A stretch of 64,000 nucleotides of DNA, taken from positions 124,001-188,000 of the IMG/VR virus record IMGVR_UViG_3300032516_000001, one strand, 5' to 3'. Shown here piece by piece: positions 15,507 to 51,301 of this stretch; within the stretch, counting starts at the first letter, position 1; every line of letters begins with the position of its first letter. Below the pieces are notes generated by a model, which saw only the letters and a program-made list of their open reading frames with translations, made no database searches and was not told the DNA's origin. The position numbers and the translations under genes were made by a program.

Positions 15507-15707
15507 ATGCGCATAGAATGTGCCTGTTACATGTGCTATAACAATCCGACCCGTTGATTTAAGCTTAGAAATAATACTGAGCTGGAGCCAAGAATTTCTG
15601 CCGCCTGTGAAAAACATTTCCGTTATATGACGGAATATACAGTATTCGACACTTATGAAGAACTAACTTCGAATGAAATTGAAGTCCTTAAAATCATGCA
15701 TTACTAA
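15507..15707 (+). pseudogene. Small Zn-finger family member interrupted by an in-frame TGA
   Basis: Manual translation MRIECACYMCYNNPTR*FKLRNNTELEPRISAACEKHFRYMTEYTVFDTYEELTSNEIEVLKIMHY; TGA at 15555-15557. Confidence 0.65.
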
Positions 15708-31204: not shown

Positions 31205-31495
31205 TTATTCATTCATAGTTATGTAGACTGTCCACAATGCCTTAAGTTCGTTTATAGCATTTCTAATCTCAGGGATATTTGGCATGTCTGGAGTTCCGAC
31301 CTCTATTATTTCTCCTAAGTGATCATCAAATATAAATTTGGATAACACTCTCCTACGATCATCCGCATGATATCTTATAAATAAATCGGCATGCTTATAT
31401 GTAGATTCAGGGTTCCCCTCCATAAGTTCAATAACATATAGACCGATAAATCTTCGCCAAACGTGCGGTTCGAATCTTTGGTGTCTAGTACACAT
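31205..31495 (-). CDS. Hypothetical protein
   Basis: 96-aa ORF overlapping the purB stop. Confidence 0.45.
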   Translation of the reverse strand: MCTRHQRFEPHVWRRFIGLYVIELMEGNPESTYKHADLFIRYHADDRRRVLSKFIFDDHLGEIIEVGTPDMPNIPEIRNAINELKALWTVYITMNE

Positions 31496-32801
31496 CTATA
31501 TCTTCGATGATTTTATCGACATGTCGTAGTGCATATTTGGTCGAACAACGAGATGCTAAATCATCTTTATTGAGTTTTCCGTCGGATATCAACTCACGTA
31601 CTTTAGAATGATTAAGTAATACCCCCAATAACTCTCCGATTTGGGTTTTCGATGCTTTTAATACCATCTCTTGAACTATGTCATGCGATTCTTTCCTCGT
31701 TAACCCAGTAGAAATTAGAGTTAACAATATGGTCTCACTACACCAGAAACGACTGTTCACTAGGTTATCTTCAATCTGCTTCTCATCTATCACAAGATTC
31801 TGAATTAGTTTAATAGTTCTATGCAGCATGAATCCAACAGTCGAAGTAATATCCGGAGCTATAAATCTTTCCACCGATGAATGGGATATGTCTCTTTCGT
31901 GCCAGAGTATGCAATTCTCCAAAGCCGGTGCAACTATGCCGCGCACATATCGAGAAAGCCCACAGAGATTTTCACTCAGGATAGGATTCTGTTTGTGGGG
32001 CATTGCACTCGAACCCTTTTGCCCCGACGCAAAACCTTCGTGAATTTCCGATACTTCACTGCGCTGTAGATGTCTAACATTAATGGCTAATCGTTCGATA
32101 GCAACCGCGATCAATGATAATGTCATGAAGAATGCAGCATATCTATCACGGGCGATGACTTGAGTAGATCCAATTGCTGGGTTGAGCCCTAACGTTTCTA
32201 GGGCTATACGTTCAATTTTAGGATCAAGATGGGCATAAGTACCAACAGCACCGGATAATTTACCGACCGCAAAATCTGTCTTAGTATTCTCCAATCTCAA
32301 TATATTGCGTTTGAATTCAGCCAAATGTCTAGCCAACATAAGCCCAAGAGTGATGGGTTCAGCATGCATTCCATGCGTTCTACCAATCATAGCAATATTG
32401 GATGTTTCTTTAATTTTGTATCTTAAAGCATCAACTATTCCATGGAGATAGTTATTGATTATCCGATACGAGTTCAATAATGCTATTGAGAATGATGTAT
32501 CGACTATATCACTGGACGTAAGACCGTAATGCAGCCATCTGGCATCAGGACCTACCTTTTCTTCTATATATTGAAGAAATGCAACAAGATCATGCTTAGT
32601 TGTTTCTTCTAATTGTTCAATTTTGGAAATATCTATGATTGATGGTAATTTTGATACAATTTTCTCGGAAGTTCCAACTGGCACAATTCCAGCTGCCTCC
32701 ATGGCTTCACAAGCCATTACCTCAACTGTTAACCAATTCTCATATTTAGTTTTTTGAGACCAAATTACATCAAATTCCGGTAGGGAATAGCGCGAAATCA
32801 T
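31485..32801 (-). CDS. purB: Adenylosuccinate lyase
   Basis: Fumarate-lyase signature GSSAMPHKQNP; TKHD, HYGLTSSD, GRTHGMHAEP, WHERDISHSSVER; 438 aa. Confidence 0.95.
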   Translation of the reverse strand: MISRYSLPEFDVIWSQKTKYENWLTVEVMACEAMEAAGIVPVGTSEKIVSKLPSIIDISKIEQLEETTKHDLVAFLQYIEEKVGPDARWLHYGLTSSDIVDTSFSIALLNSYRIINNYLHGIVDALRYKIKETSNIAMIGRTHGMHAEPITLGLMLARHLAEFKRNILRLENTKTDFAVGKLSGAVGTYAHLDPKIERIALETLGLNPAIGSTQVIARDRYAAFFMTLSLIAVAIERLAINVRHLQRSEVSEIHEGFASGQKGSSAMPHKQNPILSENLCGLSRYVRGIVAPALENCILWHERDISHSSVERFIAPDITSTVGFMLHRTIKLIQNLVIDEKQIEDNLVNSRFWCSETILLTLISTGLTRKESHDIVQEMVLKASKTQIGELLGVLLNHSKVRELISDGKLNKDDLASRCSTKYALRHVDKIIEDIDVY

Positions 32802-33240: not shown

Positions 33241-33548
33241 GGCGGTGGGATATTACAAACAGTTTCGATTTCTTCACACGTTGTAATTTGTGTCAAGCAA
33301 TCGGTATTCCAATATACACCGTTGTCATGCTGATAAATGCAAAATTCCTCACAGCTGATAGTCCCGCCATCAGCTGTGATCACAGGCTGAGATTCTTCAC
33401 ATGGTCCACCATCGGGGGCAATGATAGCCATGTGCGCGCAAGCTTCACCACATTTCTCAGCTCCGGGTACAGGGGTGACATGCGGCTCAGGTTCTCCGCT
33501 TCCACCACAACAACTGCAGATTATGACTAATGCCCATGCGTATTTCAT
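33237..33548 (-). CDS. Cys-rich lipoprotein
   Basis: MKYAWALVIICSCCGG signal and lipobox; regularly spaced Cys; ATGA overlap with the peptidase stop. Confidence 0.65.
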   Translation of the reverse strand: MKYAWALVIICSCCGGSGEPEPHVTPVPGAEKCGEACAHMAIIAPDGGPCEESQPVITADGGTISCEEFCIYQHDNGVYWNTDCLTQITTCEEIETVCNIPPP

Positions 33549-34408
33549 GCTAATGCTCCTTTGGTAAGTACCCAAAAAGATTTTGTTCCTGAATAGTTGA
33601 TAATATAATCGGTGTGCATCCAGACGTAACCTTGATCACCCCAATATTTACTCCAAGAATTTCGTACCTTGAACGCAGATTTAGCTTGGGACCAACCCAC
33701 GATGACCATCGCATGTCGACCAACAATAGGAGTACTGGGCTTATGGGCAATACCAGATTTATAAGCCATGAAGGCTTCATCTACATCGGTACCAAAGATG
33801 ACACTATGACGAGCCGCCAAAGCCTGAAGGATTAATTGTAGTCTGTCATTTCCTGTTTCTTTAATAGAATAAAATGCAGCGTATGTGTGCGCAAAAGCTT
33901 CTCTATAAGACATTAAGGAAGGCCTGTGAGCAGCATTATCAGCAATATATGGCCACCGAACTTCAGTACAAATACCATGACGCAGCATGCCATCAAGGAT
34001 AAGCCGGTTGTAGCAACCGGATGAAGCATTATAACCCTGAGGTGGATCTATCAATTGTCGCCCATTGAACCAAGCGAACATGCGAGAAAGATCTGGAGTA
34101 GTACTAACTGCCTGACTCAGAGTCATCCCATCATCTATTTTGCCTATGATAACTTGGGATTCCCCCGCGTCAACTGCTGCATTAGCAGTACACGACGGAA
34201 ATGATAACTGGTCCGAGATAGGGCGGTAAAACGAAGACACGTCCATTTCGTTCTGGACTGCGCCTCCTAAAACGAGTAATTTTGAATCTTTAGCTAATGA
34301 AAGATCTTTTTTTCCTATGTCCGGTAGATCATCTATCCAACCGAACCGCGGGATCAATCGAATCTGTGTTACATTTGTCAGTGTGATCATGGTGTTGCCT
34401 AATTTCAT
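33545..34408 (-). CDS. Papain-family (C1) cysteine peptidase
   Basis: DQ..FPSCTANA (catalytic Cys), GRHAMVIVGW (His), VRNSW...WGD.GY (Asn); the start may be TTG at 34357. Confidence 0.9.
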   Translation of the reverse strand: MKLGNTMITLTNVTQIRLIPRFGWIDDLPDIGKKDLSLAKDSKLLVLGGAVQNEMDVSSFYRPISDQLSFPSCTANAAVDAGESQVIIGKIDDGMTLSQAVSTTPDLSRMFAWFNGRQLIDPPQGYNASSGCYNRLILDGMLRHGICTEVRWPYIADNAAHRPSLMSYREAFAHTYAAFYSIKETGNDRLQLILQALAARHSVIFGTDVDEAFMAYKSGIAHKPSTPIVGRHAMVIVGWSQAKSAFKVRNSWSKYWGDQGYVWMHTDYIINYSGTKSFWVLTKGALA

Positions 34409-34811
34409 CTCTAACTTGCATCAACAGCTTACCAAGCCAGTTCTTGCCCCTACCCCCAACCTTACCCCATGTAGTGTCGCCCCAAGTATTTCCCTCTATT
34501 AACGTAGCATTGCCCGTAGCCAGGAGTTTGTCTCGTAATTCTGGTATAGCGAATTTGATCCGAAGAATATCTAACATAATATTTATCTTGATAAATTCCC
34601 AGTCTGGCCGTAACGTAACTTCCTTGCCCATTCGTTTTGCCTTGCCAGGGCTAGAAGCGAAACGGATTTGTCGCCGTTCATTCTCATTCAATGTCTTGGC
34701 CGCCTGAAATACGTGCTCACTCGAATCATAAGTATGCCCATCATACGCAATTTTACACAAATGAAAATTACTTAGGAATTCATATTCATCATCAAACCTG
34801 TCAATAATCAT
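34329..34811 (-). CDS. NADAR (YbiA-like) family protein
   Basis: FLSNF, SEH.FQA.K, LLATG...LIE.N.W.D..WG, G.NWLGKLLM.VR. Confidence 0.92.
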   Translation of the reverse strand: MIIDRFDDEYEFLSNFHLCKIAYDGHTYDSSEHVFQAAKTLNENERRQIRFASSPGKAKRMGKEVTLRPDWEFIKINIMLDILRIKFAIPELRDKLLATGNATLIEGNTWGDTTWGKVGGRGKNWLGKLLMQVRDEIRQHHDHTDKCNTDSIDPAVRLDR

Positions 34812-35008
34812 ATGCGCATGACCTCGAATGCTAGAGCTTCTTCTTTGGTAACTTCAGATATGATTTCGGAAATCTTGCTGCGCCTACGGACATCTTTGGC
34901 GCATTCATCACAACAAATTACAATCCGCTTCAGATCGTATCCACTCAAGAAATAGGTAGTAGGTATGTCTCCACAAAATTCACAAGTATTGAAATCAGCA
35001 AATCTCAT
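34808..35008 (-). CDS. Small Zn-finger protein, EVM-tag family
   Basis: CEFC..CCDEC; ends TKEEALAFEVMRI. Confidence 0.7.
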   Translation of the reverse strand: MRFADFNTCEFCGDIPTTYFLSGYDLKRIVICCDECAKDVRRRSKISEIISEVTKEEALAFEVMRI

Positions 35009-35289
35009 TCTGTCATTATTTCTTCAACAAGTTCGTCATCAAATGAAATGGTAGCATACTTAATAGAACCTTTCCCGTAAAGACCACAATTACTTTTGAT
35101 CAACTCTTTCAATCGTTTAACCGCGTCTTCTTCAGTCTCACCTGCAGAACGAAGTTGTGGGTTTGCGATACACACAGCTATGAACGGTTTTCCACTAGCT
35201 ATTGCAGTGGATATAGCGAAAGCATCGATAGGATCATGTGCACTATAACTAGCATTCATTATAACTATCGGAATTCTTGGGTATTTCAT
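35005..35289 (-). CDS. Small HicB-like fold protein, EVM-tag family
   Basis: AGETEEDAVKRL resembles HicB; ends DDELVEEIMTE. Confidence 0.55.
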   Translation of the reverse strand: MKYPRIPIVIMNASYSAHDPIDAFAISTAIASGKPFIAVCIANPQLRSAGETEEDAVKRLKELIKSNCGLYGKGSIKYATISFDDELVEEIMTE

Positions 35290-35528
35290 TCGGACATCAC
35301 CTCTGTAACCACGACTTCTTCTTCGGATGAATCGTCAAAATTCTGTGCAAGTTCGCACAATCTAAAATTGTAACATGAATCACAAACAGCAATTATCTTT
35401 CCGCTAATAACATTTTTTAGAAATCTGTCTGATGGTCTCATACAGTATCTACATTCTCTATTATGAGCGGAGAAATGAATTGGAAATGAATTCAAATAGT
35501 TACTCGCTATCTGTTTTAGGTTGGACAC
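35286..35528 (-). CDS. Small Zn-finger protein, EVM-tag family
   Basis: CRYC..VCDSC; ends SEEEVVVTEVMSE. Confidence 0.7.
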   Translation of the reverse strand: MSNLKQIASNYLNSFPIHFSAHNRECRYCMRPSDRFLKNVISGKIIAVCDSCYNFRLCELAQNFDDSSEEEVVVTEVMSE

Positions 35529-36088
35529 GGGAAATGTTTTCGTATTAGTTGCACTACTTCATCATACATCACGGGATAGAAATCCCAGGCGTCCACTCCA
35601 ACATGAATCATATTCTCGAACACCTGTTGGTTCTTGTGCGTATGACCATGGATTAAGATTTCGCCTTTCCTCCGTTCGGGTCGCTTTTCTAAAAATCTAT
35701 CATCCTCCCCTTTATTGTGTTCGACACCCGCATACGGATAATGACAAAAACGACAAATCCGACCGGCTATGGTCAAAGAGGCGCTATCCATGATTAGCGC
35801 AAAGCCTAAATCGGTCATAGACTTAACGCTTCTATCGTGGTTTCCCGGTATAAGGAATTTTATACCGTTCATCTGTCTTACAATTTCTCTGGCTCTTTCT
35901 TTATGACAGAGGAAAACGTCACCAAGCCAGAGAACGATATCGCTCATTCCTATTCGCTCATTATATCTACGGACAAGCTCCACATCCATTTCGTCAACGG
36001 AGTTAAATGGCCGATTCGCTAACTTACAAATATCCGTACGAGAGCTTTTGTGTCCAAAATGCGGATCACTATAATATGCGGTTATCAC
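35516..36088 (-). CDS. Calcineurin-like metallophosphoesterase
   Basis: SDPHFGH, LGD, GNHD and HGHTH motifs. Confidence 0.92.
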   Translation of the reverse strand: MITAYYSDPHFGHKSSRTDICKLANRPFNSVDEMDVELVRRYNERIGMSDIVLWLGDVFLCHKERAREIVRQMNGIKFLIPGNHDRSVKSMTDLGFALIMDSASLTIAGRICRFCHYPYAGVEHNKGEDDRFLEKRPERRKGEILIHGHTHKNQQVFENMIHVGVDAWDFYPVMYDEVVQLIRKHFPCPT

Positions 36089-36117
36089 AAATGACCATAC
36101 ATTCGATATTTAAAAAT

Positions 36118-36321
36118 TTACGACAACATGACCTGTAATACTATGAATTCTTCAATTGAAACAGCCCGCCTCTGGTAACAAAAACTCCCAAGACCAATAT
36201 TATCATAATCTTTGTGATCGTCACAAACTGGTATGCACTTTATCTTGGTATTAACCGGATCGATATAAAATAGTATTACTTGGGTAGCGTCATTCGCACA
36301 TACAGCCATATCACATTTCAT
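36118..36321 (-). CDS. Small Zn-finger protein, EVM-tag family
   Basis: C...VC..VCDDH; ends SIEEFIVLQVMLS. Confidence 0.7.
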   Translation of the reverse strand: MKCDMAVCANDATQVILFYIDPVNTKIKCIPVCDDHKDYDNIGLGSFCYQRRAVSIEEFIVLQVMLS

Positions 36322-36566
36322 TGAGCCATTACCTGCAAAACTTCATATTCATCAAGTGATAAATCCTGTTTGTAGGAAAAGGGCCATGGAATTTGGAAAT
36401 TCCTATGCTCATCGCATACAAAATATTGACCCCAATAAGGGCCAAGAGTCGACTCTTGTCTAAAAAAGATGACCCTTGTGACTTTGCCGTTACATTCTAC
36501 TTTTCTTCCATCCTGTGTCATTGTTGTGCACACAACATGATTTGTGTAAAAATTTATTAACTCCAT
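36318..36566 (-). CDS. Small Zn-finger protein, EVM-tag family
   Basis: VCDEH; ends SLDEYEVLQVMAQ. Confidence 0.7.
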   Translation of the reverse strand: MELINFYTNHVVCTTMTQDGRKVECNGKVTRVIFFRQESTLGPYWGQYFVCDEHRNFQIPWPFSYKQDLSLDEYEVLQVMAQ

Positions 36567-36865: not shown

Positions 36866-37141
36866 TTATTTCTTACACAAATCGGCACAATGATCGGCTA
36901 GGCGTTTCCCGTAATTTGGATCACCAACGATTTCACCTTTCTTAATGTCACCCTCAGTTATTGGTGGAAGATTTTGCTTGGCACGTTCTGCATTCACCGT
37001 CTCGAGCATCAATGAACGCTCATGCTTGATCCAAGCTGGAGTGTTAGTACCGTCGTCATCAATCATGTGCTGGTACTTATCACGGTCTGCGCTTGCAGTC
37101 CATAATGCGTTGTAGAATCTCGCTGATAGTATATTGTTCAT
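36866..37141 (-). CDS. Hypothetical protein
   Basis: GAGGA ribosome-binding site 4 nt before ATG 37141 (MNNILSARFYNALW...YGKRLADHCADLC). Confidence 0.6.
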   Translation of the reverse strand: MNNILSARFYNALWTASADRDKYQHMIDDDGTNTPAWIKHERSLMLETVNAERAKQNLPPITEGDIKKGEIVGDPNYGKRLADHCADLCKK

Positions 37142-37188
37142 GTGGTCCTCACTATCGTTTCTTGATTTTACCAAATGAAAGTCTAATG

Positions 37189-37194
37189 TATACT
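37189..37194 (+). promoter_or_regulatory. -10 box TATACT 5 nt before ATG
   Basis: TG-TATACT-TATTT-ATG, no Shine-Dalgarno sequence. Confidence 0.55.
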
Positions 37195-37199
37195 TATTT

Positions 37200-37667
37200 A
37201 TGCCGTTTCCGATATCCTCGACATCAGTATTTAGAATCGATCCTATATATGATGAACAAGAGCCATATATTGATAATGGACTGAATGATATACCGCATAA
37301 TATTCCAGGACTATTTATTGCTATACGTAATCCAATCATAAGACCAATCCCAATAACTTTTGATATCAAATTTCGAGGAACACGATACACGATTGTCCAT
37401 CCCAATATAGCCAAAATGATGATTAGGGCAGACAATTTCTGTAATGATTCATTCAATTTTGGTAGTATGGCCCCAATCACTACCTTTTCCCATGCATTTC
37501 CATTTGGACCAATCACAGATACCATTGACATTGACGAGAGAAAGAGAAATGAATTATTGCAAAAATTACGGAAAGACCTGAGCGATTGCTATAATGCAGG
37601 GATATCAGATAAAGAAATCCAACAGGTATGGGATTTCCAGTTAGTTGACAGTGTTCATCAGGAATAA
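37200..37667 (+). CDS. Hypothetical protein with an EVM-like C-terminus
   Basis: TG-TATACT lies 5 nt before ATG; ends QLVDSVHQE. Confidence 0.55.
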   Translation: MPFPISSTSVFRIDPIYDEQEPYIDNGLNDIPHNIPGLFIAIRNPIIRPIPITFDIKFRGTRYTIVHPNIAKMMIRADNFCNDSFNFGSMAPITTFSHAFPFGPITDTIDIDERKRNELLQKLRKDLSDCYNAGISDKEIQQVWDFQLVDSVHQE

Positions 37668-37679
37668 ATATCCAAATAC

Positions 37680-38055
37680 ACGAAAGCCACGGAATGAATT
37701 GCTCCACCCGTGGCCTCGCTGGTTCGCGGTTAAGCGAACCCGGTAGATGATGTAAACCCGAAAGCCTACTCCGCACTAGGTGCCCGCGCTACATCAACCG
37801 AAAGCGCGCTACCGTCTGAAGTGTTACCTTCACCCAAAACTAACTTGCGCCAACTTTGGGCCTTGCGGAACGGGAGCTCCAGGCAGCGTTTCCGCTGTCC
37901 TTTCCGGTTCATTGAGAACCCGAGGAAACCCCGGCCTCTCTCCACGGATGTTTACCTGGTGTTACCACCAGGAGGTTTCGGAGGGCTTGTCTCCGTACCG
38001 GTCGTTAATCCATTGCTGCATCAAACGACCGAAATTCCAGAGTCATTAAAGGCCC
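37680..38055 (-). ncRNA. Large structured non-coding RNA, class unassigned
   Basis: GC-rich island in AT-rich DNA with at least 10 stems. The minus strand shows GNRA tetraloops (GUAA, GAAA, several GCAA) and UUCG loops with G-U pairs. Overlapping ORFs have no recognisable content. Confidence 0.75.
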
Positions 38056-38056
38056 A

Positions 38057-38437
38057 TTAAATAATTGAGGATTCAATAAATTCAACAAAATCGTCCATGG
38101 TTGATAATCCAAAGCTATCTATGTCTGAATCGGTAGCTTCATCCAAATCGATAAAATCTATTTTGCCTGAATCCACCAAATCAATCAACTTCCTTATATC
38201 ATCATCACCCTGCATTTCTATAACGCTAGGATCTGATCCCGAGTAAAGTATCTGATCGAGTGTAGGGTCAATTTCAACAGAATTCCTACCATCTGATAAT
38301 TTAACAAAAGTACGTGTAATCGTCTCAGTTTTAACCTTAGACTTGGGCTTAGTAAGTAATATAGCAATTTTCTCAAGATTCATGTTGGCAACTCCGGAAG
38401 TTCGCCTGCATAGGGTGGCAATCTTATTAAGATCCAT
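38057..38437 (-). CDS. Hypothetical protein with a doubled N-terminal L..IA tag
   Basis: MDLNKIA...MNLEKIA; TATATT 5 nt before ATG. Confidence 0.65.
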   Translation of the reverse strand: MDLNKIATLCRRTSGVANMNLEKIAILLTKPKSKVKTETITRTFVKLSDGRNSVEIDPTLDQILYSGSDPSVIEMQGDDDIRKLIDLVDSGKIDFIDLDEATDSDIDSFGLSTMDDFVEFIESSII

Positions 38438-39243: not shown

Positions 39244-40818
39244 CTAAAATCGATAAATATATTTGATCTTAGCCGGAATTGCAATCTTGGTCAAACCAAG
39301 CTTATCAACGTACTCACGTTCTTTTAATTTCAAATTACAAGCCTTATCATAAACAGATTTTTTGTTTATTTCATTTCCATCTTTATCAACGTAAACATAA
39401 CTAGAAGTAGTTTGACCAACTTCTTCCCAATTACTTGCTTTATATATGGTACCAACATGTCCAAATCGTGGATCGGCAAACGAAACAAGACATTTAATTT
39501 CGGGAAAAGCGCTAGACACCTTCTTAATAACTCTAGACATGAGATAAGAAGCAAAATTCTTCTTATGATAACTGGGATCAATACAGAATCTGTCTAATTC
39601 CAAGACTTCGCCATGATTTAAATCAAGTGTATGCGCTATACCTTGTCTAACAGGAGTAGCGAATTTAATAACAGCAACAACTAGTTCTTGAATTTTGGCA
39701 ACAAATATAACTTTAGATGCTCGGCCAAATCCAGCATAATGATACTTATCCAAAAATTCGGTAACATCTGGAGAATGGAGTACTTGGGAAATAACTATAG
39801 AATCAAAAGAAAAATCGATAACATCAATATTTGATCTGTTATGATAACAAACCCCATTTCCAATATACTTACTATAATTACAATTCCAGCACAAAAGCTG
39901 ATATTTTGACATTAACGATGGCTTTTTAACTAATTTTTTGTAAAGATCGATTCCAGATCCTTCACCTATCTTTCTACATGCTGAACCATCATTGTATTTA
40001 TGATCCAAAGTTAACTTATAAAGATCCTTCTCTCCACAACATACGCATTTTCCACCCAATAATGTTAAACAACTCTGTCTGAATTTATCAGTTATTATTC
40101 TACGGCAAGGCAGACATCTATTACTGCCATGAGACAACTGTGATGGGAATTCGTTAACGTCTTTTTCTTTTAAACAAATATTACAAATTTTGGTTATACC
40201 TGATGAAATAACTACTTTTAACTGATGTATTGGGTTAATTCTATATTTCTTATTATTACAATTGTGGCACAATACCTGATAACGTGTTTTATCTGACTCA
40301 CCGTTTAAAATCCTACGTTTCCAACCAAGACTGCCAAAACTACGTTCAGTATTACCATCGTTATTTACATGATCTATTGTCAGAAACTCTTTAATATCTA
40401 AACCGCATGTAACGCATTTTTGACCCAATAAATCAAGAACTTGATTAATAATTGACTGTCTGTACACTCTATGACTTTCAACTACATGTTCAGCGTTATC
40501 ATCAGTCCATTTTTTTATTCTTACCCTAATCTTATCAAGATTTTTCAATCTGTATTCTGATTTATTCTTTAGTATTGCTGCACGATTTTCTTTATAATAT
40601 TCATGTTTATCATTCAAAATTTGATCATGATTATCAGCATACCATTTCTTCCTGATAACTTTTAACTTTTCACTATTTTCTATTTCATATATTTTATTAT
40701 GTTTCTTTCTACATTCCTTACACTTTGAGTCTTTCCCGTTTTTCTTAATTGTGTTATTAAAATACTCAGAAAGCAATTTTTCAACACCACATTTAACACA
40801 AATTTGTGTTGCATCCAT
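39244..40818 (-). CDS. Double-HNH endonuclease fused to a C-terminal Mom-like (GNAT) domain
   Basis: C..CG..LTIDHVNNDG..CHNCN and C.CCG..LTLDH.YNDG..CWNCN; then LDKYHY..KFATPVR..EVLELDRFCI..SFADP..GH.GTIYKASNW. Confidence 0.78.
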   Translation of the reverse strand: MDATQICVKCGVEKLLSEYFNNTIKKNGKDSKCKECRKKHNKIYEIENSEKLKVIRKKWYADNHDQILNDKHEYYKENRAAILKNKSEYRLKNLDKIRVRIKKWTDDNAEHVVESHRVYRQSIINQVLDLLGQKCVTCGLDIKEFLTIDHVNNDGNTERSFGSLGWKRRILNGESDKTRYQVLCHNCNNKKYRINPIHQLKVVISSGITKICNICLKEKDVNEFPSQLSHGSNRCLPCRRIITDKFRQSCLTLLGGKCVCCGEKDLYKLTLDHKYNDGSACRKIGEGSGIDLYKKLVKKPSLMSKYQLLCWNCNYSKYIGNGVCYHNRSNIDVIDFSFDSIVISQVLHSPDVTEFLDKYHYAGFGRASKVIFVAKIQELVVAVIKFATPVRQGIAHTLDLNHGEVLELDRFCIDPSYHKKNFASYLMSRVIKKVSSAFPEIKCLVSFADPRFGHVGTIYKASNWEEVGQTTSSYVYVDKDGNEINKKSVYDKACNLKLKEREYVDKLGLTKIAIPAKIKYIYRF

Positions 40819-44642: not shown

Positions 44643-44882
44643 ATGAGTCTAAAATGTAAAGTGGGTAAAATGAATAAATCAAGAAAATATCACAGAGATT
44701 CAGATTATCCTTTAGACAGGATCGAAGACAAGGATGATTGCCAATCCTATTCGAAATGCCTGAATGAAGCCGCTAAGAATACTAAAATTCTGAATCTACC
44801 ATGTATAGGTTGCGTCAACTATATAAAGATCGGATCGCAATTAGATGCTTGGAGAAAACGCCAAGACGGATATACGTGGTAA
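44643..44882 (+). CDS. Small Cys-rich hypothetical protein
   Basis: C..YSKCL..AA..PC.GC motif. Confidence 0.55.
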   Translation: MSLKCKVGKMNKSRKYHRDSDYPLDRIEDKDDCQSYSKCLNEAAKNTKILNLPCIGCVNYIKIGSQLDAWRKRQDGYTW

Positions 44883-45118
44883 AAGCTCATTTCTATAAAG
44901 ACATCAAATTTTATGAAGAAGGAGACCAACTCTGTTGGCTTTGTAGATCCAGTACTGCTTCGACGTATCTTCTCGTAGAGAACCATCTCTTGAAAATGGC
45001 AGAAATCTTCAAAATTTGTTCGAGGTGTGTACCTGCAATTTATTTCACTACCCTTGGTAGCATTCGCATTGAATTATCTAAAGATGAAGTAGAAGTATAC
45101 AAAATCATGGAAACATGA
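44876..45118 (+). CDS. Small Zn-finger protein, EVM-tag family
   Basis: CWLC..ICSRC; ends SKDEVEVYKIMET; GTG start at 44876. Confidence 0.7.
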   Translation: MVKAHFYKDIKFYEEGDQLCWLCRSSTASTYLLVENHLLKMAEIFKICSRCVPAIYFTTLGSIRIELSKDEVEVYKIMET

Positions 45119-47062: not shown

Positions 47063-47867
47063 TATCGGTCAAAATTTTCATGATATTCAAATTGAATTCT
47101 GGATCATATCTCCAATCGATAGTATTATTTACAAAGGAATGGATTACTTCTGATAATGGTAACGGTGAAGAAAATTCTATAGAGTTATTTAATTTCAAAC
47201 TTGGTATTAATCCATCATACATTATATATCCATCACTACCAATTACAGAAAATTTCCTTTCTTTACAGTTATGTCCGTTTCCAACTTTGATTGTGGCGTG
47301 AATCCCAACGAAATCTAACTCTAGAATATATATCTCTCCAGGATTTTTCTCCTCTTTAGTAATCTTAATTGAGTTTGGATAATTTTTAGTAACTCCAAAA
47401 CACATAGATAAATCATGTGGACCATAATCCAAAAGCGAAGAATATTCGCGGAACGGACCATGATTTAAACCGAATGATTCGATATTGAATGGGTGCTCCC
47501 AATTGGAAACCATGCTTCGTAATGCAACATAAGCCGGCGAAAATAGATGAGTATTATCAATTAAAATAGTTGTATTCTGCCTCTGCGCAGTATTAAAAAT
47601 AGCTTCGGCATCTCCTAGAGTCTCAGCGACTGGCTTTTCAAGTAGAACCGGTATCCCAGCCTCAAGAAAATGAGTGGCTATTTCCCAGTGAGTTGACGGC
47701 GGAGTAGCTATTATTACTTTATCTATTTTAGATATAATTTCACGGTAATCTGTAATCGGTCCCGTCTTGTCACATATAGCTACAAGCTCGGCGCTCGGGA
47801 CAGATTCGATAGTCTTTATGTAGTTCCTGCCCCAGGCCCCACACCCGACTAACCCCAATCTAATCAT
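47055..47867 (-). CDS. Gfo/Idh/MocA family oxidoreductase
   Basis: GLVGCGAWG, IATPPSTH, VLLEKP. Confidence 0.9.
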   Translation of the reverse strand: MIRLGLVGCGAWGRNYIKTIESVPSAELVAICDKTGPITDYREIISKIDKVIIATPPSTHWEIATHFLEAGIPVLLEKPVAETLGDAEAIFNTAQRQNTTILIDNTHLFSPAYVALRSMVSNWEHPFNIESFGLNHGPFREYSSLLDYGPHDLSMCFGVTKNYPNSIKITKEEKNPGEIYILELDFVGIHATIKVGNGHNCKERKFSVIGSDGYIMYDGLIPSLKLNNSIEFSSPLPLSEVIHSFVNNTIDWRYDPEFNLNIMKILTDIK

Positions 47868-50800
47868 TCAGCATATGCTTTTTCAGCCCATTTGAAGAAA
47901 CGGGTTAATCCCTCTCGTAATGAAATTTTCGGATTATATCCAATTTGACTCTGGGCTTTCGTGATATCTGGACAACGTCGATTCGGTTCATCAGCCGGAT
48001 AACTATCAGGATATTCGGCCACGTTATATTCTATTTTTCTATCCAATGCTCTTTCGATTTCTTTCACTAAATCAAGCACAGATATTTCGGGAGTTGGATT
48101 CCCAATATTATATGGTTCGCCAGGTACGCCATTAACCAACACCTGTAAGAACCCACGGATTGCATCCGTAGCATAACAGAACGTCCTGGTTTGATTACCA
48201 GTTCCATAAACTTGCAGAGGTTTCTTCTCTAAAACTTTGGCTCCAAAATTTGGCAAAACACGATAATCAGTCTTCTGCATACCCGGTCCATAACAATTAT
48301 GACACATGATTCCTAAATCGCCCCCAAAGAAATTTTCTGTTCCGGGAACCGTAAAATCATACACAAAACCATCAATGGTTTTGCGATCAATAGACTTAAT
48401 CTCCGCAAAAGCAATATCAGCATGGACGTCACTCCCATTCCTAGGAGAAAGCTCATGAAGTTTATCCACTTCAGTACCATTTACACCATGAACCTCAATT
48501 CGATGAGCCGTGACATAATTCTTGTGTTTGGCTGCTCTTGTTCTAAATGAGTGGACCGAACCAAGAAGCCCGAGGCGAAGAAGAAGAGCATTTAACCCCT
48601 GAATTACACCCCAATTTGAGTTATTAAAAAGAATAAACTTCCCAGTTGTTTTCGCGTCATGATTTCCATCCCCACACCAGAATCCATGAAGAAATTTTGA
48701 TATTCTATGTTTCGGTAATTTTAATACCCATCCTGGGACACACTTTGAACTTCCAGCCCCAGCCATGCCAAAGCTCTTGAAAAGTTCAACAAGGACTCTA
48801 GAATGAATAATCATAATAGGCGTTTTTGTCCTATCGATATTAATTAACGAATTTATACCAAATAACTCTTTAATGATGCGCGCCACTTTATCTAAATATT
48901 TTTTGTGTTTATCTGAATATTCAAGAGAATAAGATCCACCACTGTCACAAACATGACCATCAGCTAGGGTGTAGCCAAATAACCACAAAAGACTGTCAAT
49001 ATCCGAAATATAGTTACTGATAAATTTATCCGAACTTCTATAACATACAGATTCTTCCTTCACATGAGGAATTGATGCTGATTTAAAAATCCCAGCCGGA
49101 ATCCTATCATTTGAATCCCATTTTAAACAATTAGCAGAAAATAACCTTGATGCGACTCCGTAATCACCCGCTGCCTTTCTAAGAATGGGCGGACGGGATA
49201 AAATGACTTCTCTAATTACTTCCGAACGAAGAGATAAACCTTCATTTGGGATTTTGTCGGAAATGAAAAATGGAAGAAGATCGCTCTCTGGGATAGGCAA
49301 ACTCCGCGGAATCACGATTTTGTCACCAACATTCAAATCCTTCCCAGCTACAGCTCTGATTTCTCCATTTATAAAACGAAAAAGGTCATGATCCTCTGTA
49401 ACGGTAATAGACCTGCCCCACTTAGTATGGAAAGTAATAACTTCTTCGTTTACTTTGCGTCGAAGAATGGCCGATATAGAACGCATTATCACTCGCCCAT
49501 CAGTATTAAAAGACGGGACGGTAACTCCACCAGGAGATCCCCCAGTACGTTCATAGCACTTTTCAAAGCTTTCAAATAATAACTCTCCATCCTTTTCATA
49601 TAAAACTTTTTGATCCCCAGTCAAACAATTGAATGGACGGACTATCTTACCCTGCACCCCATAATGTTCATGGAAGATTTGAACAAGCGTCTCCCCCAAT
49701 CGCTTGCTTTCATCATAACAATTGCCGCACCAGACAGCTTTCCCATTACGACGAACACATATGATGTGGTTTTTCACATTGACACAATAAACACGCCCAT
49801 CATATTCATAACGTTTAATATTAGTTATTTTAGCATATCTCGGGCGTCTAATATTTACATGATAAAGACCTCTGACTGACTGACTTATGCAAGCAGCGTA
49901 ACCAACTCGTAGTGCTAATTCTTGTACATCATCAGCAAGTTTCTTAGACTTAGTGTAATAGATTATATGACCACCTTTCCTACCATTTTTTGCTTTTTTA
50001 ACGGTTCCATCTCCTAGTACCAAAGCATCAAGCAAAATTTTAGATTGACGAGGTGACAAATTCATATACTCACGTGGTACATATTTATCACCAGCTTTAC
50101 CAAGCGGTTTTAATAAATTAACCAAAAATTTACTACAAATTCTAAATTGATGATGATCTGAATCCATGTAATTTATACCGATACGATCCAGACAAGCAGA
50201 TATTTTTTTACGACCTTCAAGTTTAACTTGTGATATCAAGATATAATATCTTGATACATCATAAATTTTTCCATCTTCACTCATTTTAACAAAATGACAT
50301 CCACTCCGCTTTTCTTTGGTTTTTCTAGTATAAGCGCATCCTTCTGATATATAATAACCAAGAAATTCAAGCCAGTCATCCATACTTATTTTCTTCAAAT
50401 CTGGCCTAAATCGAGACGGATTTTCACTGAATTCCATCCATTTTTTCTCCGCTCCAGTAAAATTGGCCCCGGTCGGCACCCCCCAAGAGGGGCCGTATTT
50501 GATGTTACCAGCTTTGATAAATCGAAATTTCCCTATTTTATCTTTGACATATAAATTGTGATCTGGCGTAACATTTAAATCTGTTACTGTGCTAGAAAAT
50601 TGAACCATGTCACCTTTATGTTTGTACTCGATATATTCAGTCGGAACGTGATATTCAACTATTCCTTCAGGATTAAGTGTAGCAACACTAATTTCTTTTG
50701 TTAGTTTAGAAAACGATTCCCATCCGTTCTCAGTTAAAATCTCAGTTTTGTCGTCGTAACATGCCCGTTTGCCAAGAGAACTGACATTACCCCAATAGCT

Positions 50801-51301
50801 TTCAGCCGTCGGAACCCGTTTTGGATCCGGGTCCCCATAAATTTCACTGGAGCTAAAGAAAAGCAACTTAGCATTCGGTTGCCTTTTAGCTAATTCCAAA
50901 ACATTCGTTAACCCGGTGGTAGCGACCTGCAACGTCTCTAATGGGTATCTCCGATAATAGTAAGGACTGGCTATGCCGGCTGCATGTATTACAAAGTCCA
51001 CCGGTCTTTCTGGATAAAATGGTTTAATTATATCATGTTCAACAAATGCCATGTCCCGCGAAATAGGAACATCCTTACCTTTTTCGCCAGCAGTAATGAA
51101 ATTATCTAAAACAATGAGTTCACATAGCGGTTTCCCATTATCCCAGAATAAATTTTTGTTCAAATAAATAAAGACATCGCTGAAATATCTGCCGAGGAAC
51201 CCACGCCCACCGGTTATGAGTATTCTCTTTCCCGAGAACTCCCAAGCGAGATCGCCCAGGCTCTCAGCAATTTCTTCTATATCACTCTTCAATAAAAACA
51301 T
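47864..51301 (-). CDS. NAD-dependent epimerase/dehydratase (UDP-glucuronate decarboxylase-like) containing two inteins
   Basis: TGGRGFLG, HAAGIASP..Y, SSSEIYGDP, YWGNV..RA|CYDESKRLGE, RPFN|CYGP; the spliced product would be 354 aa. Confidence 0.9.
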   Translation of the reverse strand: MFLLKSDIEEIAESLGDLAWEFSGKRILITGGRGFLGRYFSDVFIYLNKNLFWDNGKPLCELIVLDNFITAGEKGKDVPISRDMAFVEHDIIKPFYPERPVDFVIHAAGIASPYYYRRYPLETLQVATTGLTNVLELAKRQPNAKLLFFSSSEIYGDPDPKRVPTAESYWGNVSSLGKRACYDDKTEILTENGWESFSKLTKEISVATLNPEGIVEYHVPTEYIEYKHKGDMVQFSSTVTDLNVTPDHNLYVKDKIGKFRFIKAGNIKYGPSWGVPTGANFTGAEKKWMEFSENPSRFRPDLKKISMDDWLEFLGYYISEGCAYTRKTKEKRSGCHFVKMSEDGKIYDVSRYYILISQVKLEGRKKISACLDRIGINYMDSDHHQFRICSKFLVNLLKPLGKAGDKYVPREYMNLSPRQSKILLDALVLGDGTVKKAKNGRKGGHIIYYTKSKKLADDVQELALRVGYAACISQSVRGLYHVNIRRPRYAKITNIKRYEYDGRVYCVNVKNHIICVRRNGKAVWCGNCYDESKRLGETLVQIFHEHYGVQGKIVRPFNCLTGDQKVLYEKDGELLFESFEKCYERTGGSPGGVTVPSFNTDGRVIMRSISAILRRKVNEEVITFHTKWGRSITVTEDHDLFRFINGEIRAVAGKDLNVGDKIVIPRSLPIPESDLLPFFISDKIPNEGLSLRSEVIREVILSRPPILRKAAGDYGVASRLFSANCLKWDSNDRIPAGIFKSASIPHVKEESVCYRSSDKFISNYISDIDSLLWLFGYTLADGHVCDSGGSYSLEYSDKHKKYLDKVARIIKELFGINSLINIDRTKTPIMIIHSRVLVELFKSFGMAGAGSSKCVPGWVLKLPKHRISKFLHGFWCGDGNHDAKTTGKFILFNNSNWGVIQGLNALLLRLGLLGSVHSFRTRAAKHKNYVTAHRIEVHGVNGTEVDKLHELSPRNGSDVHADIAFAEIKSIDRKTIDGFVYDFTVPGTENFFGGDLGIMCHNCYGPGMQKTDYRVLPNFGAKVLEKKPLQVYGTGNQTRTFCYATDAIRGFLQVLVNGVPGEPYNIGNPTPEISVLDLVKEIERALDRKIEYNVAEYPDSYPADEPNRRCPDITKAQSQIGYNPKISLREGLTRFFKWAEKAYAE
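48296..49627 (-). mobile_element. Intein 2 (444 aa) with a LAGLIDADG endonuclease
   Basis: Starts CLTGDQKV; TEDHDL; LFGYTLADG and FLHGFWCGDG; ends VYDFTV..IMCHN; +1 residue is Cys. Confidence 0.92.
49721..50761 (-). mobile_element. Intein 1 (347 aa) with a LAGLIDADG endonuclease
   Basis: Starts CYDDKTEILTENGW; block B TPDHNL; LAGLIDADG helices FLGYYISEG and LLDALVLGDG; ends VWCGN; +1 residue is Cys. Confidence 0.9.

What the first reader, a model, noticed from the sequence alone, without database searches (positions are those of the whole stretch)
34808..36566. Dispersed family of small proteins sharing a C-terminal [ST]x[DE]Exx[VA]xx[VI]Mxx-stop tag
Seen: TKEEALAFEVMRI* (34808), DDELVEEIMTE* (35005), SEEEVVVTEVMSE* (35286), SIEEFIVLQVMLS* (36118), SLDEYEVLQVMAQ* (36318), SKDEVEVYKIMET* (44876) and TSNEIEVLKIMHY* (15507). 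Variants occur at 37200 (LVDSVHQE*), 38666 (LMVHHS*) and 45247 (IVYAITES*). The bodies are divergent, mostly CxxC..CxxC/H fingers, and one is HicB-like. The tag is conserved at protein level with synonymous DNA variation and always sits at the extreme C-terminus. Inference: a shared docking, export or degron signal for a family of host-takeover effectors.
Basis: partly seen in the sequence, partly recalled or inferred. Interest (0 to 1): 0.66.

Follow-up and report, generated by a model that had tools for sequence, protein, structure and literature searches.

The report
Expanded phage zinc-ribbon family, conserved C-terminal helix
The shared "tag" is real, but it is mainly the last strand and helix of a previously undescribed small zinc-ribbon protein family that has multiplied in large sediment phages, and only a few unrelated proteins carry a similar ending, so a portable signal is possible but unproven.

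Summary
In the 241.6-kb phage record that contains the window, the motif [ST]x[DEN][DE]xx[VAIL]xx[VIL]Mxx sits exactly at a stop codon 11 times and occurs internally only twice in six frames. A scoring matrix built only from foreign relatives finds 12 C-termini at 15 bits or more, against 0.06 expected.

They share a zinc ribbon (C..C ... CxxH/C), an 11-23 residue linker, then [WY][KR]EI[ST]x[ED]E[FYA]xVxx[VI]Mxx-COOH. A profile search found about 70 more such proteins of 62-125 aa in metagenomes, all ending in the same register. One 20-kb stretch of another phage contig carries at least 17.

AlphaFold2 places the tag as a fifth beta-strand plus a terminal helix at pLDDT about 95, so it is part of the fold. 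Pfam, PHROGs and structure searches (best Z 4.8) give no family. The nearest solved relative is the ClpG/ClpK N1 zinc domain (E 0.0036).

Some points remain open. A HicB-like protein, a 203-aa protein, a membrane protein and an extended ribbon carry similar endings. The Met is lost in the internal copies of three fused two-domain proteins and one extended ribbon.

The copy at 15507 carries a strain-specific TGG-to-TGA nonsense change.

The parts
36318..36566 (-). Family member E, 82 aa. Zinc ribbon with predicted ligands C13, C25, C51 and H54. The tag is strand Y65-S70 plus helix L71-A81, at window 36321-36371.
   Evidence: The AF2 model has mean pLDDT 85, and 95 for residues 71-80. P0006 is a 91% identical orthologue in related contigs L014-L016.
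36118..36321 (-). Family member D, 67 aa, a zinc ribbon (C..C...CDDH) with tag SIEEFIVLQVMLS at 36121-36171. It ends in TAA, and no gene start overlaps its stop.
   Evidence: The external matrix scores it at 28.5 bits. The ribbon-only profile gives E 6.8e-9.
35286..35528 (-). Family member C, 74-80 aa with an uncertain start. Zinc ribbon (CRYC...CDSC) with tag SEEEVVVTEVMSE at 35289-35339. An ATGA overlap joins it to the next gene.
   Evidence: The matrix score is 25.9 bits. Orthologues in L014-L016 start differently.
35005..35289 (-). Protein B, 94 aa, not a zinc ribbon. The body is HicB/UPF0150-like (a lead only). Its ending TISFDDELVEEIMTE lies at 35008-35058.
   Evidence: The external tail matrix scores it at 17.6 bits. 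Homologues at 57-85% identity keep TISFDDELVEE[IV]MxE unchanged. Profile-profile comparison with the ribbon family aligns only tail to tail (P 0.0024, probability 12%). The HicB-like reading rests on Atlas neighbours scoring 0.85-0.87, and Pfam gives no hit.
34808..35008 (-). Family member A, 66 aa, a zinc ribbon (CEFC...CDEC) with tag TKEEALAFEVMRI at 34811-34861. An ATGA overlap joins it to the NADAR gene.
   Evidence: The matrix score is 28.5 bits. A B-like gene followed by an A-like gene is also found in a more distant relative, P0081 then P0057 on one 841-bp contig.
44876..45118 (+). Family member of 80 aa from GTG 44876, or 105 aa from ATG 44801. Zinc ribbon (CWLC...CSRC) with tag SKDEVEVYKIMET at 45065-45115.
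   Evidence: The matrix score is 28.3 bits. It is conserved in L014.
15507..15707 (+). Family member interrupted by an in-frame TGA at 15555-15557 (MRIECACYMCYNNPTR*FKL...AACEKH...TSNEIEVLKIMHY). The tag lies at 15654-15704.
   Evidence: The matrix score is 22.6 bits. Divergent strains in two sediment runs read G at 15557, giving TGG (Trp), so this strain carries a nonsense allele.

Best explanation
The 'tag' is the C-terminal structural element, one beta-strand plus an 11-residue amphipathic helix, of a previously undescribed small zinc-ribbon domain of about 60-100 aa.

The domain has four zinc ligands (C, C, C, H/C) on two knuckles and a long beta-hairpin carrying a conserved 'PAT-x-F' strand. 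An 11-23 residue variable linker follows, and then [WY][KR]EI[ST]x[ED]E[FYA]xVxx[VI]Mxx-COOH.

- The EI[ST] segment adds a fifth strand to the sheet.
- I-[ST]-x-x-E-[FY] is a hydrophobic staple plus an N-capping box that starts the helix.
- V(-7), [VI](-4) and M(-3) form the face that I infer packs on the hairpin. This is an inference, because the model's coordinates could not be read.

In such a small domain the zinc site and this strand-helix make up nearly all of the core. They stay fixed while the exposed hairpin and loops diverge to about 20% identity.

The family has multiplied in tandem arrays in large phages of sediments: at least 12 copies in this 57%-complete record and at least 17 in 20 kb of another contig. 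The copies lie in blocks of small, same-strand genes that often overlap by ATGA.

By inference, these are zinc-stabilised binder scaffolds whose paralogues each recognise a different target. The targets are unknown.

Shown: the motif and its enrichment, full-length homology, strict co-occurrence of ribbon and tail, the predicted placement of the tail in the fold, and protein-level selection. Inferred: packing of the helix on the sheet, the binder role, and expression timing.
For: - Enrichment at stops.
- Full-length alignment of 10 genome copies and 69 family members. C13, C25 and C51 are invariant, and E73 and M80 are conserved in at least 90%.
- A profile search returned 78 hits at E <= 1e-3. 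Nearly all are 62-125 aa and all end in the same register, with Met at -3 in 67 of 69.
- Information content peaks at the four ligands, at A and F of the ribbon strand, and in the tail. The linker is 11-23 residues, and the fourth ligand is H in 55 and C in 14.
- AF2 with 69 sequences gives mean pLDDT 85, strands 13-16, 22-25, 31-39, 42-50 and 65-70, helix 71-81, and pLDDT 95 for residues 71-80 in a monomer model.
- The ribbon-only profile finds 19 distinct proteins in three contigs, and every one carries the tail.
- Multi-copy arrays occur in unrelated contigs L011, L012 and L017.
- The zinc-ribbon core resembles the ClpG/ClpK N1 domain. The profile gives E 0.0036 to 8p66_B, and N1 uses the same C,C,C,H ligand set (PMC10641755).
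Against: - A similar and strongly conserved ending occurs on bodies that are not ribbons:
  - the HicB-like protein B (17.6 bits);
  - the 203-aa protein ending at genome position 4282, whose 52%-identical homologue has the same last 10 residues;
  - a two-TM protein, P0085;
  - L011 +14800;
  - an extended ribbon in L017 whose own helix has become internal and lost VM, while the new C-terminus again ends in AIVMRVMES.
- In three fused two-domain proteins the internal first copy has A, N or I in place of the Met, while 67 of 69 terminal copies keep it.
- An invariant Met, and termination exactly two residues later in about 100 proteins, is more than a buried helix normally requires.
- The model's coordinates could not be inspected, so packing of the helix on the sheet is inferred from pLDDT alone.
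Confidence: 0.6

Rival explanations
1. The ending is a portable C-terminal recognition element, and may also be a structural helix. A short helix with a free end (...V-x-x-[VI]-M-x-x-COOH) would be read by one common partner, such as an assembly hub, a protease or adaptor, or another family member. This would tie many different early phage proteins to one fate.
For: - The tail occurs on at least four non-ribbon bodies, and within each of those small families it is the most conserved segment.
- The Met is kept only when the helix is terminal: 67 of 69 terminal copies, against 0 of 4 clear internal copies (P0012, P0026, P0040 and L017 +17713).
- An extended ribbon re-creates the ending at its new C-terminus.
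- The register relative to the stop is fixed in every member seen.
Against: - No partner was found. The held part of the genome has no S41, PDZ or ClpP family hit.
- The last residues are polar (E, S). By my knowledge of ssrA-type and Tsp/FtsH C-terminal degrons, those end in non-polar residues.
- The helix is confidently built into a monomer fold.
- Ribbons never lack the tail.
- Most of the motif is generic helix-start and amphipathic-helix grammar, so convergence on other bodies is plausible. Profile-profile support for tail homology with protein B is weak (probability 12%).
- Several non-ribbon cases score only 8-13 bits.
- The choice of last residue is largely set by the ATGA overlap.
Confidence: 0.22
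2. The helix is a self-association module. Each protein would form dimers or higher oligomers, or mixed oligomers with paralogues, through the C-terminal helices.
For: - Natural fusions of two complete domains in one chain exist (P0012, P0026, P0040). Such fusions are a classical hint that the units act together.
- The helix has a broad hydrophobic face at positions -9, -7, -6, -4 and -3.
Against: - There is no direct support.
- The monomer model is already confident.
- In ClpG, the nearest solved relative, the N1 domain with its helical C-terminal part is monomeric (PMC10641755).
Confidence: 0.12
3. The conservation is a nucleic-acid signal. The 3' ends would carry the ribosome-binding site or coupling signal for the overlapping downstream gene, and the peptide motif would be a by-product.
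For: - 8 of 15 tails in this genome and 10 of 14 in L017 end NNA-TGA, which forms an ATGA stop/start overlap. This forces the last codon (GAA here, TCA in L017).
- In this genome the codon before Val(-4) is G-ending in 7 of 9 cases, giving AGGT or GGGT about 9 nt before the downstream ATG.
Against: - All Val and Ile codons are used at -4, and Ile codons give no Shine-Dalgarno match.
- Members with no overlapping downstream gene keep the motif (36118, 15507, and genome positions 4282, 5176 and 231129).
- The G-ending bias is absent in L017, where GAA GTC is common.
- The upstream half of the motif (EI[ST]xEE) lies too far from the downstream start.
- This reading explains at most the last one or two residues and some codon choice.
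Confidence: 0.03

Closest known systems
N1 zinc-binding domain of the AAA+ disaggregase ClpG/ClpK (PDB 8P66; Katikaridis et al. 2023, PMC10641755)
   Same: - It is the best hit of the family profile among all PDB sequences (E 0.0036, 20.7 bits, profile positions 5-51).
- It has the same C-x2-C ... C-x2-H ligand set (C6, C9, C31, H34), a 'CG-x-PAT' strand and a beta-hairpin ribbon.
- N1 binds hydrophobic peptides by adding a strand to that sheet. This is the position I infer for the family's own EI[ST] strand.
   Different: - N1 lacks the linker and the strand-helix ending.
- N1 is the N-terminal domain of a large ATPase, not a free-standing 60-100 aa phage protein.
- The sequence match is weak, and N1 did not appear in the structure searches.
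- No function can be transferred.
C-terminal peptide signals of bacteria and phages (ssrA/ClpX degrons, the SspB XB tail, T4 clamp-binding tails). This comparison rests on my own knowledge.
   Same: They sit at the extreme C-terminus, are short, and can be shared by otherwise different proteins.
   Different: - Those signals are disordered and mostly end in non-polar or aromatic residues.
- This ending is a predicted folded helix with polar last residues.
- It is almost always attached to one domain type.
- No reader protein is known or was found.
Small phage zinc-ribbon families such as Lar (Pfam PF14354) and DUF4428 (PF14471)
   Same: They are free-standing phage proteins of about 60 aa with two CxxC-type knuckles. 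Member A gives a weak hit to Lar_restr_allev (E 0.013). One of the 69 members hits DUF4428 at E 0.0025.
   Different: Both scores are below the curated cut-offs (16.2 against 28.6 bits for Lar). Neither family has the conserved C-terminal strand-helix.
HicB/UPF0150 antitoxin-like fold (applies to protein B only)
   Same: Several HicB and UPF0150 clusters are among the nearest Atlas neighbours by features (0.85-0.87) and by structure. The sequence has the typical 'AVC...P..G.TEEDA...LKE' core.
   Different: There is no Pfam hit, no HicA-like partner was seen nearby, and the protein carries the extra terminal helix.

Membership tests
New zinc-ribbon plus terminal-helix family (defined here by alignment A2) | Four zinc ligands in the pattern C..C ... 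C-x-x-H/C with a conserved A-x-x-F strand. | tested here: met
   Window copies A, C, D, E and 44876 align with three invariant Cys and an H/C fourth ligand. The 15507 copy has the motifs but is interrupted by TGA. Protein B lacks them.
New zinc-ribbon plus terminal-helix family (defined here by alignment A2) | The protein ends EI[ST]x[ED]E[FYA]xVxx[VI]Mxx, with the stop two codons after the Met. | tested here: met
   The window copies score 22-28 bits against a matrix built only from foreign members.
ClpG/ClpK N1 domain | A C,C,C,H zinc site on a beta-hairpin ribbon with significant sequence or structure similarity. | tested here: inconclusive
   The ligand pattern is the same, and the profile gives E 0.0036. 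No structural hit was reported.
ClpG/ClpK N1 domain | N-terminal domain of an AAA+ Hsp100 protein. | tested here: not met
   All members are free-standing proteins of 62-125 aa.
Lar restriction-alleviation protein (PF14354) | Score above the Pfam gathering cut-off of 28.6 bits. | tested here: not met
   Member A scores 16.2 bits (E 0.013). The other members do not hit.
HicB-like antitoxin (PF15919/PF21748), for protein B | A Pfam match, and an adjacent HicA toxin. | tested here: not met
   B and its homologues give no Pfam hit at E <= 0.1. The neighbouring genes are ribbon members A and C. Only the Atlas neighbours point to the fold.
C-terminal degron of the ssrA type | A disordered tail ending in non-polar residues, recognised by ClpXP, ClpAP, FtsH or Tsp. 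| tested here: not met
   The last two positions are mostly E/N/A and S/E. The segment is a confident helix. The record has no ClpP, S41 or PDZ family hit. Recognition by host proteases could not be tested.
Shine-Dalgarno or translational-coupling element | Nucleotide-level conservation that does not depend on the encoded residues. | tested here: not met
   Synonymous codons vary freely at the conserved residues. Only the last codon (NNA before TGA) is constrained.

The most novel reading that the evidence does not exclude
The ending is a portable 'terminal helix tag'. In this reading a group of very large sediment phages marks a large share of their small early proteins with one C-terminal helix that must be free-ended. 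The marked proteins would include zinc ribbons, a HicB-like protein, a membrane protein and others. A single, still unknown partner would read the tag and give the whole set a common fate, such as assembly on a hub, timed removal or delivery.
Probability: 0.2. Interest if true: 0.8.

Novelty: new variant of a known kind. Interest (0 to 1): 0.45.

Why it matters
Small zinc-ribbon proteins are common in phages and almost never understood. Here one such family is defined that is absent from Pfam and PHROGs and has no structural neighbour. It has been amplified until it makes up a large share of the small genes in some megaphage regions, at least 17 in a 20-kb stretch with 44 called genes.

A scaffold with a fixed zinc site and terminal helix and hypervariable loops is what an arms-race binder repertoire would look like. 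That makes it a concrete target for structure and interaction work.

If the ending also acts as a free-end signal, it would be a new way for a phage to control many effectors at once. If not, the result shows how a conserved 'tag' can simply be the core of a tiny fold.

Tried and rejected
- **Close relatives in the phage collection or IMG/VR.** Megablast of the locus found nothing. The neighbouring phosphatase found no related viral locus. The alignment had no stretch conserved enough for a pattern search. P0007 looks like an animal Ig-repeat protein and was not pursued.\n- **Lost Python box.** The Python box was lost. A tree of paralogues and a within-genome against between-genome identity comparison were therefore not done.\n- **Literature searches.** No description of this family was found.
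Full report
**Setting**

The window is bases 124,001-188,000 of a single 241,648-bp virus record with 42% GC. IMG/VR classes the record as linear, and CheckV estimates it to be 57% complete. It encodes a DNA polymerase, a helicase and collagen-like tail fibres, so it is a tailed phage. An identical protein lies on a 323-kb contig, so the phage is very large. Near-identical DNA occurs in sediment metagenomes from at least four studies. There is no close relative in the phage collection.

**The observation**

- Over the whole record, the pattern [ST].[DEN][DE]..[VAIL]..[VIL]M.. is followed by a stop 11 times and is internal 2 times in six frames.
- I built a position matrix from 60 relatives that do not come from this genome and anchored it at the C-terminus. 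It gives 12 frames at 15 bits or more against 0.06 expected, and 18 frames at 8 bits or more against 0.41 expected.
- At the DNA level every Val and Ile codon is used at the conserved positions, so selection acts on the peptide.
- The three 'variants' at 37200, 38666 and 45247 are not members. One is antisense to a conserved gene, none has the Met, and none is among the 30 best matrix scores.

**What the proteins are**

Ten copies from this genome align from end to end. Each has C-x(2-11)-C, then 'P-A-T-x-F' on a strand, then a hairpin, C-[DE]-x-[HC], a linker, and the tag.

A profile of these ten copies was scored against 1.84 billion representative proteins. It returned 78 hits at E <= 1e-3.

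- Apart from four repeat-protein false positives and five two-domain fusions, the hits are 62-125 aa proteins from metagenomes. They are unnamed or called 'hypothetical'.
- In the 69-sequence alignment, three Cys are invariant and E73 and M80 are conserved in at least 90%.
- The fourth ligand is H in 55 and C in 14, and the linker is 11-23 residues.
- All 69 sequences end in the same register. The tail consensus is [WY][KR]EI[ST]x[ED]E[YAF]xVxx[VI]Mxx, with Met at -3 in 67 of 69.
- Apart from the zinc ligands and the A..F strand, the tail holds almost all of the information in the family.

Pfam and PHROGs do not contain the family.

**Copy number and context**

This record has 12 ribbon copies in five places.

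- Genome stop positions: 5176, 25165, 25460, 26526, 26816, 139705, 158810, 159288, 160120, 160320, 169116 and 231129.
- Near-identical strains (L014-L016) keep the window cluster in the same order: a 221-aa gene, a 91-aa gene, E, D, a metallophosphatase, C, B, A, a NADAR gene and a peptidase C1 gene.
- Unrelated contigs carry their own arrays, at least 6 copies in L011 and at least 9 in L012. L017 has at least 17 in a 20-kb stretch with 44 called genes.
- A profile of the ribbon alone, with the last 17 residues removed, finds 19 distinct proteins in these sequences. Every one has the tail, two of them with His in place of Met.

**Structure**

AlphaFold2 with the 69-sequence alignment gives mean pLDDT 85. 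The model has strands 13-16, 22-25, 31-39 and 42-50, a short turn at the second knuckle, strand 65-70 and helix 71-81. Residues 71-80 have pLDDT 95. The tag is therefore a fifth strand (..EI[ST]) plus the terminal helix.

By established knowledge of helix starts, I-[ST]-x-x-E-[FY] is a hydrophobic staple (N' and N4 positions) with a capping box (Ser/Thr at the N-cap, Glu at N3). V(-7), [VI](-4) and M(-3) form an i, i+3, i+4 stripe. I could not read the model's coordinates, so packing of this stripe on the hairpin is an inference from the high confidence in a monomer model.

No solved or predicted structure matches convincingly.

By sequence profile, the nearest solved protein is the N1 domain of ClpG/ClpK (8p66_B, E 0.0036). 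In N1, zinc is held by C6, C9, C31 and H34, and the sheet binds hydrophobic peptides by adding a strand (PMC10641755). This makes an in-cis strand addition by the family's own C-terminus a reasonable picture, but it is a lead and not a membership claim.

**What does not fit a purely structural reading**

(i) Protein B (35005-35289) is not a ribbon.

- Atlas neighbours point to a HicB/UPF0150-like fold.
- Its ending scores 17.6 bits with the foreign matrix.
- Homologues at 57-85% identity keep TISFDDELVEE[IV]MxE unchanged.
- hhalign aligns the two families only tail to tail and end to end, and only weakly (P 0.0024, probability 12%).

(ii) The 203-aa protein ending at genome position 4282 scores only 9.3 bits. 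Its 52%-identical homologue nevertheless has the same last 10 residues.

(iii) Other contigs show three more cases.

- P0085, a protein with two predicted membrane helices, ends SLREAIVASVMES.
- L011 +14800 (129 aa, helical) ends EELAIMKIMED.
- One ribbon in L017 has an internal tail, LTREEFFVLAILG, followed by about 110 residues that again end AIVMRVMES.

(iv) In the two-domain fusions P0012, P0026 and P0040 the first, internal copy has A, N or I where terminal copies have Met.

These points keep a 'free-end signal' reading alive. The numbers are small, several scores are marginal, and the motif's grammar is generic enough for convergence.

**Nucleotide overlay**

- Eight of 15 tails in this genome and 10 of 14 in L017 end NNA-TGA, which forms the ATGA overlap with the next gene. 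This fixes the last codon (GAA, GCA, ATA, CAA or ACA here; TCA or GCA in L017).
- The overlap explains the preference for E here and S there at the last position. I had first taken that preference for co-evolution with a partner.
- The overlap does not explain the rest of the motif. Members without an overlapping downstream gene keep the motif too.

**Other tests**

- A homodimer prediction gave 'no answer' and is not used as evidence.
- The held part of the genome has no S41 peptidase, PDZ or ClpP family match.
- The 15507 copy has TGA where divergent strains in two runs read TGG. It is a strain-specific nonsense allele, not evidence for another genetic code. TGA is the usual stop of the family's own genes.

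**Verdict**

It is best explained as the conserved strand-helix end of a new, heavily amplified phage zinc-ribbon domain (confidence about 0.6). Less likely, but not excluded (about 0.2), the free-ended helix is also a recognition element shared with a few other proteins. The targets and the function are unknown.

Noticed in passing
window 37640-38060 (- strand folded): An ORF-free island of about 400 nt with 52-57% GC sits in a 35-40% GC neighbourhood, between genes 36866-37531(-) and 38057-38437(-). It folds far better than shuffles (-175.4 kcal/mol, z -6.6, 0 of 100 shuffles as good). There is no tRNA and no Rfam match (one chance snoRNA at E 0.98). The same gap between called genes exists in the related contig L014. 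It is a candidate new structured RNA.
   Followed up: partly
window 15555-15557: There is an in-frame TGA in the family member at 15507-15707. Contigs of divergent strains in two sediment runs read G at 15557 (TGG, Trp). The near-identical strains keep TGA, so this is a nonsense allele fixed in this strain.
   Followed up: yes
window 31205-31495 (-): A 96-aa frame ends NELKALWTVYITMNE* and scores 12.6 bits with the foreign tail matrix, but it has no ribbon. It is a marginal extra carrier of the ending, and its start overlaps the end of gene 31485-32801.
   Followed up: no
window 33545-36088 and 39244-40818: The ribbon cluster is embedded among unusual accessory genes: a papain-like peptidase C1, a NADAR domain protein, a metallophosphatase and a 524-aa fusion of HNH-type zinc motifs with a Mom-like domain.
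   Followed up: partly
genome positions 228526 and 228783 (- strand; outside the window, locus L008): Two neighbouring small proteins carry a minimal C-x2-C-x(8-9)-H-x4-C finger whose helix reads TEEECIVAQVM or TEDECIVAQIH. This resembles the tag but is internal and followed by 10-27 more residues. Met and His interchange here, and also in three tail variants elsewhere.
   Followed up: no
window 47864-51301 (-): A 1145-aa ORF has separate PHROG matches to nucleotide-sugar epimerase, thymidylate synthase or ribonucleotide reductase, and large terminase segments. This pattern suggests an intein-bearing or mosaic gene.
   Followed up: no
protein P0010 (metagenomic, 821 aa): A secreted repeat protein has units that read ...C-E-A-C-G...W-I-E-T-T-R-E-E-V-V-I-L-P-L-G-H. 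The unit is a Cys-rich knuckle followed by a segment that resembles the tag, and it is repeated about 14 times. It matched the family profile at E 3.5e-9. Whether it is related or convergent is unknown.
   Followed up: no
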